Made by a program: the position numbers and the translations under genes. Positions 7,857 to 14,115 of a stretch of 64,000 nucleotides of DNA are shown piece after piece (positions within the stretch are counted from its first letter, which is position 1; each line of letters begins with the position of its first letter). The notes beneath the pieces are model-generated. The model ran no database searches, was not told the origin of the DNA, and worked only from the letters and a program-made list of their open reading frames with translations. Source of the DNA: Macrostomum lignano (Eukaryota); assembly GCA_002269645.1 (NCBI GenBank), contig NIVC01000052.1, positions 248,001 to 312,000 of the forward strand, given 5' to 3'.

Positions 7857-10800
7857 ATGGAGAAGCCAGCAACCGCGGAGCGTCCGCACGACCTGGTCAG
7901 CTATCGGGACACCGGCGAGCTCTCCGACCTCACCGTAGTTGTCGACTCCGAGCGCGAGCTGCCGCTGCACAGATTCCCGCTCTACATCAAGTCCGACTAT
8001 TTCCGCGAGCGGGCCTCGGAGTCCCGGGTGAGCCTGCCGGCCAAGTTTCCCGGCGGTTCCGCCTGCTTCGAGCTGGTGGCCGACTTCTGCTACGGCAAGC
8101 GCATCGACATCGGGCCGGACAACTGCGTGCAGCTGAACGCCGCAGCCAAGCTGCTCGGCATGGGCGGCAGGGACAACCTGGCCGACCTCACCGACCGCTA
8201 CCTGGACGAGATCCTGCGCTCCGCCCAGCACAGCCGCTCGATGGGGCCGGTGGTTGAACTGCTGGCCAAGGCGACGGCGATTTCCCAGGCCGACAACGCG
8301 GACGACGGCGAGGCGGAGGCGGATCCGGCGGTGAAGGCTATCGCCGAGCGCTGCTTCTCGACTCTGCTGGACGCCTGGACTCGGCAGCAGCCGTTCGGCT
8401 CCGGCGGCGCCGTTGGCGAGCGGCTGCTGCGACTGCCGTTGACTTGGTTCGCCCGGCTGGTCGGCGCAGCCACTGCAGACAGCGACAGGTGGGAATTTTT
8501 AATGGAGCAAGTGTGTTTAGTGTTTTTCTCTGGGCTCCAGAGTTTCCTTTCCCCGGCTAATTTGTACAGGAGATGTCGGCTGCCGACTGTAAGCTCTAGA
8601 ATGGAAATAATTGAGGGCGGAATTGCTGAGATGTCAAGGCTTATTGGGGGAATTGCTGAGATGTAAGGATTATTGGGGGAATTGCTGAGATGTCAAGGCT
8701 TATTGGCGGAATTGCTGAGATGTCAAGGCTTATTGGCGGAATTGCTGAGATGTCAAGGCTTATTGGCGGAATTGCTGAGATGTCAAGGCTTATTAGGGGA
8801 ATTGCTGAGATGTCAAGGTTTATTTGGGGAATTGCTGAGATGTCAAGGCTTATTAGGGGAATTGCTGAGATGTCAAGGCTTATTGGGGGAATTGCTGAGA
8901 TGTCAAGGCTTATTGGGGGAATTGCTGAGATGTCAAGGATTATTGGGGGAATTGCTGAGATGTCAAGGCTTATTGGGGGAATTGCTGAGATGTCAAGGAT
9001 TATTGGCGGAATTGCTGAGATGTCAAGGATTATTGGGGGAATTGCTGAGATGTCAAGGCTTATTGGGGGAATTGCTGAGATGTCAAGGCTTATTAGGGGA
9101 ATTGCTGAGATGTCAAGGATTATTGGGGGAATTGCTGAGATGTCAAGAATTATTGGGGGAATTGCTGAGATGTCAAGGCTTATTAGGGGAATTGCTGAGA
9201 TGTCAAGGATTATTGGGGGAATTTCTGAGATGTCAAGGCTTATTAGGGGAATTGCTGAGATGTCAAGGATTATTGGGGGAATTTCTGAGATGTCAAGGCT
9301 TATTGGGGGAATTGCTGAGATGTCAAGGCTTATTGGCGGAATTGCTGAGATGTCAAGGCTCACGAGGGATTGCTGAGATGTCAAGGATTCTTGGGGGCAT
9401 TGCTGAGATGTCAAGGCTCACGAGGGATTGCTGAGATGTCAAGGATTCTTGGGGGCATTGCTGAGATGTCAAGGCTTATTGGGGGAATTGCTGAGATGTC
9501 AAGGCTTATTGGGGGAATTGCTGAGATGTCAAGGCTTATTGGGGGAATTGCTGAGATGTCAAGGCTTATTGGGGGAATTGCTGAGATGTCAAGGCTCTCG
9601 GGGGGGAATTGCTGAGACGTCAAGGCTCTCAGGGGGGGGAATTGCTGAGATGTCAAGGCTTATTGGGGGAATTGCTGAGACGTCAAGGCTCTCGGGGGGG
9701 AATTACTGAGACGTCAAGGCTCTCGGGGGGGGGAATTGCTGAGATGTCAAGGATTATTGGCGGAATTGCTGAGATGTCAAGGATTATTGGCGGAATTGCT
9801 GAGATGTCAAGGCTTATTGGGGGAATTGCTGAGATGTCAAGGCTTATTAGGGGAATTGCTGAGATGTCAAGGATTATTGGGGGGATTTCTGAGATGTCAA
9901 GGCTTATTAGAGGAATTGCTGAGATGTCAAGGATTATTATGGGAATTGCTGAGATGTCAAGACTTATTGGGGGAATTGCTGAGATGTCAAGGCTTATTAG
10001 GGGAATTGCTGAGATGTCAAGGCTCACGAGGGATTTCTGAGATGTCAAGGCTTATTGGGGGAATTGCTGAGATGTCAAGGCTTATTGGGGGAATTGCTGA
10101 GATGTCAAGGCTTATTGGGGGAATTGCTGAGATGTCAAGGATTATTGGCGGAATTGCTGAGATGTCAAGGATTATTGGGGGAATTTCTGAGATGTCAAGG
10201 CTTATTGGGGGAATTGCTGAGATGTCAAGGCTTATTGGGGGAATTGCTGAGATGTCAAGAATTATTGGGGGAATTGCTGAGATGTCAAGGCTTATTGGGG
10301 GAATTGCTGAGATGTCAAGGCTTATTGGGGGAATTGCTGAGATGTCAAGGCTTATTGGGGGAATTGCTGAGATGTCAAGGATTATTGGCGGAATTGCTGA
10401 GATGTCAAGAATTATTGGGGGAATTGCTGAGATGTCAAGGCTTATTGGGGGAATTGCTGAGATTTCAAGGCTTTTTGAGGGAATTGCTGAGATGTCAAGG
10501 CTTATTGGGGGAATTGCTGAGATGTCAAGGCTTATTGGGGGAATTGCTGAGATGTCAAGGCTTATTGGGGGAATTGCTGAGATGTCAAGAATTATTGGGG
10601 GAATTGCTGAGATGTCAAGGCTTATTGGGGGAATTGCTGAGATTTCAAGGCTTTTTGAGGGAATTGCTGAGATGTCAAGGTTTACGGGGGGGGATTGCTG
10701 AGGTGTCAAGACTGAAAGATTAGAAACTACACGACCTCTTATAAATCATAAAAAAACTAATTTACATTCTTTGTTGTCTCCCCAACGGGGGGGCGCTGAT

Positions 10801-13800: not shown

Positions 13801-14115
13801 AGCAGCAGCGTCCACTACGCCGATCCTTACATTGGCCGAGGTGATTTTTTAGTCAGCTGACTTATAAAAAGTATTTATAACCCCCAAGTTGGAGTTTTCA
13901 CAAGAGCTTATTTGCACTTTTCAGGCTACCTGGATGATGATGCGTACGGGGAAACTGCGGAGCTGAGCTCGGGCAGTCGTTACACTGCTCAGGATTACGA
14001 TGTGGATCTGCTGCTTCTAGAGGCAGAGAGAAGTGCCCAGCAGCAGCAACAGCAGCAGAGGTCGGCAAACTATCCTTATTATCAGGCGCAGTACGGGCGC
14101 TCCAGAAGGTGGTGA
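7857..14115 (+). CDS. BTB/POZ + NPH3-domain protein (NPH3/RPT2-like), join(7857..8488,10854..11418,11897..12053,12151..12365,13687..13840,13925..14115), 637 aa
   Basis: Six phase-consistent GT-AG exons totalling 1914 nt. NRL-type BTB: [61 protein letters not shown]3 C-terminal half: [58 protein letters not shown]. The last two exons are less certain. Confidence 0.85.
8612..10700. repeat. 30-bp minisatellite (GGAATTGCTGAGATGTCAAGGCTTATTGGG), ~70 copies, intron 1 of the NPH3-like gene
   Basis: Two units per 60-nt line (e.g. 10081..10140). Confidence 0.97.
11501..11850. repeat. 20-bp minisatellite (TTGGCTGATGTCTGAGGGGG), ~17 near-identical copies, intron 2
   Basis: Three units per line, near-perfect. 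Confidence 0.97.
12455..12790. repeat. Degenerate ~120-150-bp repeat, ~3 copies (CACCTCAC..AATGTAC[A/G]CAG..GA..ATTGGCT)
   Basis: Core recurs near 12470, 12590 and 12740. Confidence 0.55.
13253..13665 (+). mobile_element. Dispersed element copy 1: ~140-bp head + (GACA)n tail
   Basis: Head (TTAGAACCAA..TTGCAATAGCTCTG..GGCAGGTG..TTAATGATTG.TATTCATGGTAGCATAAA.CTGATTCAGTG.ATTTTGGCTTT) is shared with 19199..19625. Confidence 0.7.

What the first reader, a model, noticed from the sequence alone, without database searches (positions are those of the whole stretch)
7857..14115. Intact NPH3/RPT2-like (BTB-NPH3) gene, a family known from plant phototropism, in an animal genome
Seen: six in-phase exons give a 637-aa protein. 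Its BTB carries the NRL signature [17 protein letters not shown]..[14 protein letters not shown]. Its C-terminal block ([56 protein letters not shown]) lines up by eye with the plant NPH3 domain (LVDGYLAEIA..KFIALAE.IP..AR..HDGLYRAIDIYL..LCRLLDCQKL..AAQNERLP..V), including the Tyr of the LYRAID motif. Known: NRL proteins (NPH3, RPT2, NPY/MAB4) are CUL3 adaptors acting with phototropin and PIN polarity, and are usually described as plant-specific. Inference: this is an unstudied animal NRL lineage, from ancient retention or horizontal transfer, possibly a CUL3 adaptor at polarised membranes. Host-type introns and repeats argue against contamination.
Basis: partly seen in the sequence, partly recalled or inferred. 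Interest (0 to 1): 0.85.

Follow-up and report, generated by a model that had tools for sequence, protein, structure and literature searches.

The report
Animal relative of plant phototropism proteins
This flatworm gene is an intact member of the BTB-NPH3 protein family, which textbooks call plant-only, and its relatives turn out to be spread across animals from sponges to molluscs and acorn worms, so the family's core job cannot be specific to plant light or auxin responses.

Summary
Six GT-AG exons (7857-14115, + strand) encode a 637-aa protein. Pfam BTB scores 30 bits (cut-off 20.5) and Pfam NPH3 scores 41 bits (cut-off 27). The protein is 100% identical to the Macrostomum lignano model BOX15_Mlig026640g1. 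Cadherin, serpin, aminotransferase and armadillo exons flank it, with matching codon composition, so it is not contamination.

It is not a lone oddity. An exhaustive profile search found relatives in flatworms (including Schistosoma), a nemertean, an annelid, gastropods, octopus, a rotifer, a hemichordate, an octocoral and homoscleromorph sponges. Animal and plant profiles align in the same order from the BTB to the end of NPH3 (HHalign 100%, E 1.8e-56). With the NPH3 region alone the result is 99.4%, E 5.5e-22. In a bootstrap tree, animals form a clade separate from plant NRLs (100%), so recent transfer is excluded. Retention from a plant-animal ancestor and a very ancient transfer cannot be told apart here.

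Function is inferred: a BTB-dimer scaffold with an all-helical partner-binding domain and a disordered tail. The CUL3-contact motif is absent in this protein but present in 10 of 34 relatives. Databases already auto-label such proteins; the literature I searched still calls NPH3 plant-specific.

The parts
7857..8488 (+). Exon 1 (aa 1-211, ends in phase 2). Holds the start ATG, the BTB/POZ domain and the helices that follow it.
   Evidence: splice model, donor GTGGGA. (100% identical to the NCBI model). (tblastn).
7902..8165 (+). BTB/POZ domain (aa 16-103) with the NRL-type signature FPGG..FEL.ADFCYG...N..L.AAA.LL.M.
   Evidence: PF00651, 30 bits against 20.5. (Foldseek BTB matches, TM about 0.75, rmsd 1.6-2.0). 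(P65, G66, G67, D76, C78, Y79 nearly invariant across 32 animal members).
8489..10853 (+). Intron 1, mostly a 30-bp minisatellite of about 70 copies (8619-10710).
10854..11418 (+). Exon 2 (aa 211-399). Holds an acidic, disordered, flatworm-specific insert (aa 254-307, nt 10981-11142) and the N-terminal helices of the NPH3-like region ([20 protein letters not shown]...[13 protein letters not shown]...).
   Evidence: (pLDDT below 50 for aa 254-307). (these helices align to the plant NPH3 profile).
11419..11896 (+). Intron 2, with a 20-bp minisatellite of 17.5 copies (11501-11851).
11897..12053 (+). Exon 3 (aa 400-452, ends in phase 1). Core of the Pfam NPH3 match, including [12 protein letters not shown] with the conserved Tyr (Y442).
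12151..12365 (+). Exon 4 (aa 452-523). Holds the last NPH3 helices ([41 protein letters not shown]; the homologous region ends near nt 12317) and the start of the disordered tail.
   Evidence: domain model pLDDT 91.
12366..13686 (+). Intron 4, with a (GACA)n microsatellite of about 68 copies (13395-13665).
13687..13840 (+). Exon 5 (aa 524-575). Disordered Ser/Gly/Arg-rich tail.
   Evidence: (pLDDT below 50 for aa 512-600).
13925..14115 (+). Exon 6 (aa 575-637 plus the TGA stop). Tyr-rich end ...[15 protein letters not shown], with the terminal basic-aromatic motif shared by free-living spiralian relatives.

Best explanation
Shown: window 7857-14115 (+) is an intact six-exon Macrostomum lignano gene for a BTB-NPH3 protein. 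It belongs to a metazoan clade found from homoscleromorph sponges through an octocoral, spiralians and a hemichordate. That clade is homologous over its whole length (BTB, linker helices, complete NPH3 domain) to plant NPH3/RPT2-like (NRL) proteins and branches outside the sampled plant NRLs. The gene has been inherited vertically within animals and is fully adapted to its host: host-type GC3, spliceosomal introns full of the host's minisatellites, and a diverged paralog on another contig.

Inferred mechanism:
- The BTB domain dimerises the protein.
- The roughly 320-residue all-helical NPH3 module is a partner-binding platform.
- The long disordered Ser/Tyr/Arg-rich tail, which ends in a basic-aromatic motif, is a regulatory or localisation element.
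- By analogy with plant NPH3, NPY/MAB4 and NRL5, the protein most likely acts as a cortical or membrane-trafficking scaffold. I put this at about 35%.
- The ancestral animal form was probably also a CUL3 substrate adaptor, because sponge, cnidarian-type and hemichordate members keep a Met-x-Asp at the CUL3-contact position.
- This flatworm copy has lost that motif, so I rate CUL3-adaptor function for this particular protein at only about 30%.
- It cannot work with phototropins in the plant manner: the plant C-terminal phosphorylation / 14-3-3 motif is absent, and animals are not known to have phototropins (own knowledge).
For: - Gene model and identity.
- Domains. Of 32 animal members, 32 match BTB and 19 match Pfam NPH3 at E <= 1e-3, best 2.2e-18.
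- Whole-length homology to plant NRLs: HHalign probability 100%, E 1.8e-56, 417 columns in the same order. NPH3 region alone: 99.4%, E 5.5e-22, 188 columns.
- Breadth: the exhaustive profile search gave 339 cluster representatives at E <= 1e-3, and the top ~60 look non-plant by sequence, with recognisable plant NRLs starting near E 1e-11. Named taxa come: Tubulanus, Owenia, Ptychodera, Haliotis, Physella, Littorina, Bulinus, Octopus, Dendronephthya, Adineta, Schistosoma, Dicrocoelium, Calicophoron, Hymenolepis, Cichlidogyrus, Corticium and Oscarella.
- Tree: the plants|animals split has 100% of 200 bootstraps; the sponge clade 100%, neodermatan flatworms 92.5%, gastropods 100%.
- Host residency: flanking cadherin, serpin, aminotransferase and ARM exons; GC3 0.80 against 0.60-0.87 in the neighbours; minisatellite-filled introns here and in the paralog.
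- Structure: a BTB plus a confident all-helical domain, pLDDT 91 and pTM 0.84.
- Plant functions used for the analogy: PMC11313873, PMC13017905, 10.64898/2026.08.17.745269.
Against: - There is no expression, localisation or interaction data for any animal member; the mechanism is analogy only.
- The Pfam NPH3 match on this protein covers only profile positions 181-252 of 258. Homology for the rest of the domain rests on the profile-profile alignment.
- The CUL3 phi-x-E contact is not present in the window protein, which has R-V-S at the KLHL3 M83-S84-E85 spacing.
- The NPH3 region has no solved structural relative and no G-domain fold, so the GTPase activity reported for plant NPH3 domains cannot be supported or refuted from sequence.
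- The tree is a distance (NJ) tree with only 12 plant sequences and no outgroup.
- Only 30 of the hit clusters could be named, so presence or absence in protists, fungi, ecdysozoans and vertebrates was not established here.
Confidence: 0.85

Rival explanations
1. Very ancient horizontal transfer. The BTB-NPH3 gene moved once between the streptophyte lineage and the stem of animals, in either direction, before sponges split from other animals, and was inherited vertically afterwards. This rivals only the origin part of the best explanation, not what the gene is now.
For: The literature places the origin of NPH3 at the base of plants (PMC4327156; PMC1257465). Every one of the 30 looked-up clusters that carried an organism name was an animal; none was a fungus or protist, and several clusters carried no name. 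That pattern is patchy: animals plus plants. The plants|animals split sits on a long branch.
Against: Naming was possible for only 30 clusters, so absence from protists is not shown. Unnamed divergent hits exist, for example P0117. Intron positions differ between the plant and flatworm genes. The animal clade is not nested within the sampled plant subfamilies.
Confidence: 0.3
2. Recent horizontal transfer from a plant into Macrostomum, or plant DNA contamination or chimeric assembly of the contig.
For: The best cellular matches outside flatworms in the first search were plant NRLs, from Dendrobium and Handroanthus.
Against: Identity to plant proteins is only 20-22% over the full-length alignment. 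The gene lies between cadherin, serpin, aminotransferase and ARM exons on an 883-kb contig. GC3 matches the neighbours. The introns carry the same kind of minisatellites as the paralog and the rest of the window. A 49%-identical paralog sits on a different 721-kb contig. Orthologs occur across flatworms and seven other phyla. The animal clade has 100% bootstrap support.
Confidence: 0.01
3. An ordinary animal BTB-BACK-type protein whose helical extension gives a chance or compositional match to the NPH3 model.
For: The Pfam NPH3 match covers only 72 residues. The helices right after the BTB align with KLHL3 and KBTBD4 BTB-BACK structures.
Against: There is no BACK, Kelch or other domain hit even at E <= 10. 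The paralog matches NPH3 profile positions 104-251, and other animal members reach E 2.2e-18. The NPH3-only profile-profile comparison gives E 5.5e-22 over 188 columns. The sponge C-terminus continues into a coiled-coil-like stretch that lines up with the plant one by eye. RefSeq's own naming pipeline chose Arabidopsis NRLs as the nearest named proteins.
Confidence: 0.01
4. A decaying or non-functional duplicate: M. lignano has many recent duplicates, and some family models look frameshifted.
For: Some M. lignano family models (P0004, P0026) contain stretches that read like frameshifted translations. The CUL3-contact motif is degenerate in this copy.
Against: This copy has an uninterrupted 637-codon frame across six exons with canonical splice sites. 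It retains all nearly invariant family residues. At 49% identity to its paralog it is still confidently folded in both domains, which implies long-term purifying selection.
Confidence: 0.04

Closest known systems
Arabidopsis NPH3 and RPT2 (NRL family founders; phototropin signalling, proposed CRL3 adaptor)
   Same: Same N-terminal NRL-type BTB (FPGG..FEL..FCYG), same complete NPH3 helical domain in the same order, the conserved Tyr of the LYRAID motif, and a long disordered C-terminal region.
   Different: About 20% identity. A flatworm-specific acidic insert splits the NPH3 region (aa 254-307). There is no plant-type C-terminal phosphosite or 14-3-3 motif: the tail ends in GRSRRW (motif described in PMC13017905). 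Animals are not known to have a phototropin partner (own knowledge). The protein branches outside the sampled plant NRLs.
Plant NPY/MAB4/MEL and SIB (NRL2) proteins: polar plasma-membrane scaffolds that maintain PIN polarity or join the SOSEKI network
   Same: Same BTB-NPH3 architecture. This is the plant subgroup whose role (cortical polarity and trafficking) is least tied to light, so it is the most plausible functional analogue (PMC11313873; 10.64898/2026.08.17.745269).
   Different: PIN transporters and SOSEKI are plant proteins. No localisation data exist for any animal member. The analogy is inference only.
Arabidopsis NRL5/NPY8: NPH3 domain reported as a GTPase that interacts with RAB-E1c/H1b and VAMP721/722
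   Same: Homologous NPH3 domain. RABs and R-SNAREs are conserved in animals (own knowledge), so such partners could exist.
   Different: [quoted passage not shown] The animal domain is all-helical, with no P-loop or G-domain fold. Activity is untested.
Metazoan BTB-BACK CUL3 adaptors (KLHL3, KBTBD4, SPOP)
   Same: The BTB fold and the first helices after it align with KLHL3 as crystallised with CUL3 (4hxi_A, profile positions 3-160) and with KBTBD4. Ten of 34 animal BTB-NPH3 proteins keep Met-x-Asp at the phi-x-E position.
   Different: No BACK or Kelch domain. The window protein lacks phi-x-E. The substrate-binding module is the NPH3 helical domain rather than a beta-propeller.

Membership tests
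NPH3/RPT2-like (NRL, BTB-NPH3) family | N-terminal BTB/POZ domain | tested here: met
   PF00651, 30 bits against a cut-off of 20.5, aa 16-103. Foldseek matches to solved BTB domains, TM about 0.75 and rmsd 1.6-2.0 A.
NPH3/RPT2-like (NRL, BTB-NPH3) family | NRL-type BTB sequence signature (FPGG...FEL.A.FCYG...N...L.CAA..L.M) | tested here: met
   The signature is present in the window protein and aligned to the plant consensus. P65, G66, G67, D76, C78 and Y79 are nearly invariant in 32 animal members.
NPH3/RPT2-like (NRL, BTB-NPH3) family | NPH3 domain (PF03000) above Pfam's gathering score | tested here: met
   41 bits against 27, E 2.3e-10, but only profile positions 181-252 of 258. The paralog covers 104-251. 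Nineteen of 32 animal members match at E <= 1e-3.
NPH3/RPT2-like (NRL, BTB-NPH3) family | Homology across the whole NPH3 domain, in the same order after the BTB | tested here: met
   HHalign of the animal against the plant profile: probability 100%, E 1.8e-56, 417 columns, plant columns 24-485. NPH3 region alone: probability 99.4%, E 5.5e-22.
NPH3/RPT2-like (NRL, BTB-NPH3) family | Conserved Tyr in the (H/D)DGLYRAIDIYL motif | tested here: met
   [12 protein letters not shown] aligns column for column; Y442 is retained. Sponge members have Phe at this position.
NPH3/RPT2-like (NRL, BTB-NPH3) family | C-terminal coiled coil (present in many plant NRLs) | tested here: inconclusive
   The full-length model shows helices at aa 488-510, 520-530 and 601-621, but at low confidence beyond aa 511. 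No coiled-coil predictor was run. Sponge members have a clear heptad-like stretch that aligns with the plant one by eye.
NPH3/RPT2-like (NRL, BTB-NPH3) family | Conserved C-terminal phototropin phosphosite / 14-3-3 motif (NPH3 S744 type, Ser near the C-terminus) | tested here: not met
   The tail ends ...[11 protein letters not shown], and free-living spiralian relatives end in basic residues plus W, Y or F. The motif is described in PMC13017905; its exact position in plants is from my own knowledge.
NPH3/RPT2-like (NRL, BTB-NPH3) family | Placement inside the plant NRL radiation | tested here: not met
   Animals and plants separate with 100% bootstrap (NJ, 427 columns, 200 replicates). It is a sister clade or clan, not a member of any sampled plant subfamily.
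NPH3/RPT2-like (NRL, BTB-NPH3) family | Physical or functional coupling to phototropin / AGCVIII kinases | not testable with these tools
   Needs biochemistry. Animals are not known to have phototropins (own knowledge).
CUL3 substrate adaptors of the BTB-3-box type | phi-x-E motif in the alpha3/beta4 loop (KLHL3 M83-S84-E85) | tested here: not met
   The window protein has R-V-S at the same spacing. Ten of 34 animal relatives have M-x-D or V-M-E. Motif definition from PMC3616122.
CUL3 substrate adaptors of the BTB-3-box type | 3-box / first BACK hairpin after the BTB | tested here: inconclusive
   The animal profile aligns to KLHL3 chain 4hxi_A residues 41-205. Foldseek aligns 181-205 columns with KBTBD4. 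No residue-level check of the contact positions was made.
BTB-BACK-Kelch proteins | BACK (PF07707) and Kelch repeats | tested here: not met
   No such Pfam hit, even at E <= 10.
P-loop / G-domain GTPases | alpha/beta G-domain fold | tested here: not met
   The NPH3-region model is all-helical: 11 helices, no strands, pLDDT 91. There is no PDB match at E <= 1e-3, only generic helical repeats.

The most novel reading that the evidence does not exclude
BTB-NPH3 proteins were already present in the common ancestor of plants and animals, which is close to the last eukaryotic common ancestor. The NPH3 domain would then be an ancient cortical polarity / vesicle-trafficking module, possibly the unconventional GTPase reported for NRL5. 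It would have been co-opted for phototropin and auxin signalling in plants, kept in many marine and spiralian animals, and lost in vertebrates and the ecdysozoan model species.
Probability: 0.25. Interest if true: 0.85.

Novelty: new variant of a known kind. Interest (0 to 1): 0.62.

Why it matters
Plant biology treats the NPH3 domain as plant-specific. [quoted passage not shown] A conserved animal clade, from sponges to hemichordates, overturns that distribution. It also implies that the domain's core biochemical role does not depend on phototropins, PINs or auxin.

It gives the long-standing question 'what does the NPH3 domain do?' independent experimental systems: Macrostomum (RNAi, transgenesis) and Schistosoma (RNAi). 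It also flags an uncharacterised gene, conserved across the flatworms sampled here, in medically important parasites. Humans appear to lack it: Stogios et al. found no BTB-NPH3 protein in any genome they surveyed other than Arabidopsis (PMC1257465); the statement that their set included human and other vertebrate genomes is from my own knowledge.

The caveat is that the sequence databases already carry automatic labels pointing to this. The novelty is therefore in recognising and characterising the clade, not in the raw sequence.

Tried and rejected
The exhaustive representative search was what revealed the family.
2. Shared intron positions as a test of vertical descent were inconclusive. The sponge gene is intronless. 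The flatworm paralogs share three of five intron positions with each other. The last plant intron (phase 0, after K470) lies 4 nt from flatworm intron 3 (phase 1, in codon 452), which is close but not identical. My exact splice solver failed on the plant gene because the assembly differs slightly from the protein, so I resolved that junction by eye.
3. The full-length fold search against the PDB matched only the BTB. The NPH3-only search found nothing significant.
4. Literature searches for NPH3 combined with Macrostomum, Octopus, metazoa or horizontal transfer, for PF03000, for RefSeq-style names and for the gene ID found no paper on animal NPH3 proteins. The one animal paper citing PF03000 only lists it among generic signalling domains.
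5. Contamination, recent transfer, a spurious BTB-BACK match and pseudogene status were each considered and rejected (see rival explanations).
Absence from protists, fungi, arthropods, nematodes and vertebrates is therefore not shown by my own data.
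Full report
**The observation**

I rebuilt the gene from the raw sequence. Exons 7857-8488, 10854-11418, 11897-12053, 12151-12365, 13687-13840 and 13925-14115 on the + strand join into a 1914-nt open frame.

Pfam confirms both domains above the curated cut-offs:
- BTB: 30 bits against 20.5, aa 16-103.
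- NPH3: 41 bits against 27, E 2.3e-10, aa 400-471. This match covers only the last third of the NPH3 model (positions 181-252 of 258).

No BACK, Kelch or other domain appears, even at E <= 10. The window holds a single copy.

**Whose gene it is**

The protein is 100% identical over its full length to NCBI 'hypothetical protein BOX15_Mlig026640g1' of the free-living flatworm Macrostomum lignano, on an 883-kb contig. The gene model therefore already exists and already carries precomputed PF00651 and PF03000 labels.

The window also encodes the following, all confirmed by Pfam:
- cadherin-repeat exons (39770-44811, +);
- two serpin genes (59.2-62.3 kb, -);
- a class I/II aminotransferase (27.9-31.5 kb, +);
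- an armadillo-repeat gene (18.7-23.7 kb, -).

The candidate's GC3 (0.80) falls within the range of these neighbours (0.60-0.87), and its introns (GC 0.47) match the window average of 0.48. Three of its introns are packed with mini- or microsatellites. Tandem arrays of this kind occur throughout the window, and four of the five introns of the paralogous gene on another 721-kb contig are filled with minisatellites. Contamination, chimeric assembly and recent acquisition are all excluded.

**How far the homology to plant NRLs goes**

A multiple alignment with two plant NRLs and a sponge protein runs in the same order from the BTB to the end of the NPH3 domain. Formal profile-profile comparisons gave:
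- 32 animal proteins against 12 plant NRLs: probability 100%, E 1.8e-56, one alignment of 417 columns running from the BTB through the whole plant NPH3 domain.
- The same test with the BTB removed: probability 99.4%, E 5.5e-22 over 188 columns.

The short Pfam match therefore understates the relationship. The flatworm protein has the full NPH3 module, interrupted by an acidic, disordered, lineage-specific insert (aa 254-307). The Tyr of the plant LYRAID motif is conserved as Y442.

**It is a family across animals**

An exhaustive HMMER scan of 1.84 billion cluster representatives, using a profile built only from flatworm and sponge NPH3 regions, found 339 proteins at E <= 1e-3 and 20 at E <= 1e-30. 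The top ~60 hits look non-plant by sequence, and recognisable plant NRLs begin around E 1e-11.

Looking up 30 clusters gave these names:
- Platyhelminthes: other M. lignano proteins (UniProt: 'NPH3 domain-containing protein'), Schistosoma spp., Dicrocoelium, Calicophoron, Hymenolepis, Cichlidogyrus.
- Nemertea: Tubulanus polymorphus.
- Annelida: Owenia fusiformis.
- Gastropoda: Haliotis spp. ('At5g48800-like'), Physella, Littorina, Bulinus.
- Cephalopoda: Octopus spp. ('phototropism 2-like', 'At1g30440-like').
- Rotifera: Adineta vaga.
- Hemichordata: Ptychodera flava.
- Cnidaria: Dendronephthya gigantea ('At3g08660').
- Porifera (homoscleromorphs): Corticium candelabrum, Oscarella lobularis.

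All 32 full-length animal members tested have a Pfam BTB, and 19 have a Pfam NPH3 hit at E <= 1e-3 (best 2.2e-18).

I built a neighbour-joining tree on 427 well-occupied columns with 200 bootstraps. It gave:
- animals separated from plants in 100% of replicates;
- sponges as a 100%-supported clade branching first within animals;
- neodermatan flatworms recovered at 92.5% and gastropods at 100%;
- the Macrostomum proteins grouped with the other flatworms.

That is the pattern expected from vertical inheritance within Metazoa.

**Origin**

Recent transfer is out. What remains open is a choice between two scenarios:
- descent from a common ancestor of plants and animals, with many losses;
- one very ancient transfer between the streptophyte and animal stems.

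Intron positions do not decide it either. The sponge gene has no introns. The two flatworm paralogs share three of five intron positions. The last plant intron lies 4 nt and one phase away from flatworm intron 3.

I give vertical retention a slight edge and ancient transfer about 0.3.

**Structure and mechanism**

AlphaFold2 models the BTB and the helical regions with pLDDT 80-92 and leaves aa 254-307 and 512-600 disordered. The NPH3 region alone, modelled with 12 animal sequences, gives pLDDT 91 and pTM 0.84, with eleven helices and no strands.

Against the PDB:
- Only the BTB finds good matches, with TM about 0.75.
- KBTBD4 and NPR1 extend into the following helices.
- The NPH3 module finds nothing at E <= 1e-3, only generic helical repeats.
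- No NPH3 structure has been solved.

The module is therefore not a canonical G-domain, whatever the basis of the GTPase activity reported for plant NRL5 (PMC11313873).

For the CUL3-adaptor idea I tested one defined feature, the phi-x-E contact motif (KLHL3 M83-S84-E85; PMC3616122). Ten of 34 animal members carry a hydrophobic-x-acidic triplet at the same spacing from the alpha3 'YF' (nine are Met-x-Asp and one is Val-Met-Glu); they are sponges, cnidarian-type proteins, Ptychodera and Haliotis. The window protein has R-V-S in a shortened loop, and all flatworm members lack the motif. The plant NRLs I sampled lack it too, yet NPH3 is reported to act with CUL3 (cited in PMC13017905), so its absence is not decisive.

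My reading, as inference:
- The protein is a BTB-dimerised scaffold whose helical NPH3 platform binds partners.
- Its disordered, Tyr/Ser/Arg-rich tail regulates localisation.
- A cortical or trafficking scaffold role has about 35% probability.
- A CUL3-adaptor role for this particular copy has about 30%.
- The plant C-terminal phosphosite / 14-3-3 motif is absent, and a phototropin-linked role is not expected.

**Comparison with what is known, and novelty**

Architecturally and by homology this is a BTB-NPH3 protein. It is not a member of any sampled plant NRL subfamily; it belongs to a sister, animal-wide clade with its own tail features.

The literature I could search does not know it:
- Stogios et al. 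found BTB-NPH3 only in Arabidopsis among 17 genomes (PMC1257465).
[quoted passage not shown] - Searches pairing NPH3 with animal taxa, with horizontal transfer, with PF03000, with RefSeq-style names or with the gene ID found nothing relevant.

The databases, however, already carry automatic labels that point to it. I therefore rate it a new variant of a known kind, with moderate-to-high interest. It is surprising to specialists and it opens animal systems for studying the NPH3 domain. Set against that, it is not unique to this window and function is still unknown.

Noticed in passing
window 13925-14115 (C-terminus); relatives P0002, P0015, P0018, P0023, P0025, P0028, P0033, P0038, P0062, P0064: Free-living spiralian BTB-NPH3 proteins share a Tyr-rich disordered tail whose last residues are basic followed by a terminal aromatic (...GRSRRW, ...SSRKW, ...VPTKW, ...KYPRY, ...YSHRY, ...SYHRF). 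Fifteen of 16 end in W, Y or F. Parasitic flatworms lack this ending. Cnidarian-type and hemichordate members instead have an S[FY]WP[FY] motif, and sponge members have a separate ~100-aa C-terminal domain with an LWTP/LYTP motif.
   Followed up: partly
window 8619-10710, 11501-11851, 13395-13665; L005 10313-16252: Introns of this gene and of its paralog are largely made of unrelated minisatellites (units of 30, 20, 32, 17 and 24 bp) or (GACA)n. The whole window is unusually rich in such arrays, including a 3.3-kb array of a 20-bp unit (44988-48323) and 2 kb of (ATAG)n (49811-51836).
   Followed up: partly
L003 10001-11866 and 13643-15100; L002 2986-10631: In the homoscleromorph sponge Corticium candelabrum, and in an unnamed ENA assembly, the BTB-NPH3-like genes are intronless and lie in tandem clusters of several BTB genes. 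The flatworm genes have five introns.
   Followed up: partly
window 12053/12151 (intron 3) versus L004 ~11582/39141: Flatworm intron 3 (phase 1, codon G452, conserved in the paralog after aa 443) lies only 4 nt from the last intron of a plant NRL gene in the alignment (phase 0, after IDIYLK). It is too close to ignore and not identical, so it cannot count as a shared intron.
   Followed up: yes
BTB alpha3/beta4 loop: window ~8000-8030; relatives: A Met-x-Asp at the CUL3-contact (phi-x-E) spacing is kept in sponge, cnidarian-type, hemichordate and Haliotis members, but is lost in all flatworm members and in most other spiralians sampled. This suggests lineage-specific loosening of CUL3 coupling.
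   Followed up: partly
M. lignano proteins P0004 and P0026: Some deposited M. lignano models of the paralog contain stretches that read like frameshifted translations of the same gene. These are either assembly indels or decaying duplicates in this recently duplicated genome.
   Followed up: no
window 39770-44811 (+), 59192-62308 (-), 27909-31496 (+), 18748-23676 (-): The neighbouring genes are a multi-exon cadherin-repeat (protocadherin-like) gene, two tandem serpins, a class I/II (aspartate-type) aminotransferase and an armadillo-repeat (ARMC5-like, below cut-off) gene. ORFs at 1059-1493 (+) and 4687-5244 (-) have no Pfam match.
   Followed up: partly
L001 1728-3140 (Logan run ERR14224705): A 470-aa relative (42-44% identical to the window protein in full-length alignments) is encoded without introns on a 3.9-kb contig assembled from a public sequencing run. 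It is probably a transcript from another flatworm-like animal. The organism is unidentified.
   Followed up: no
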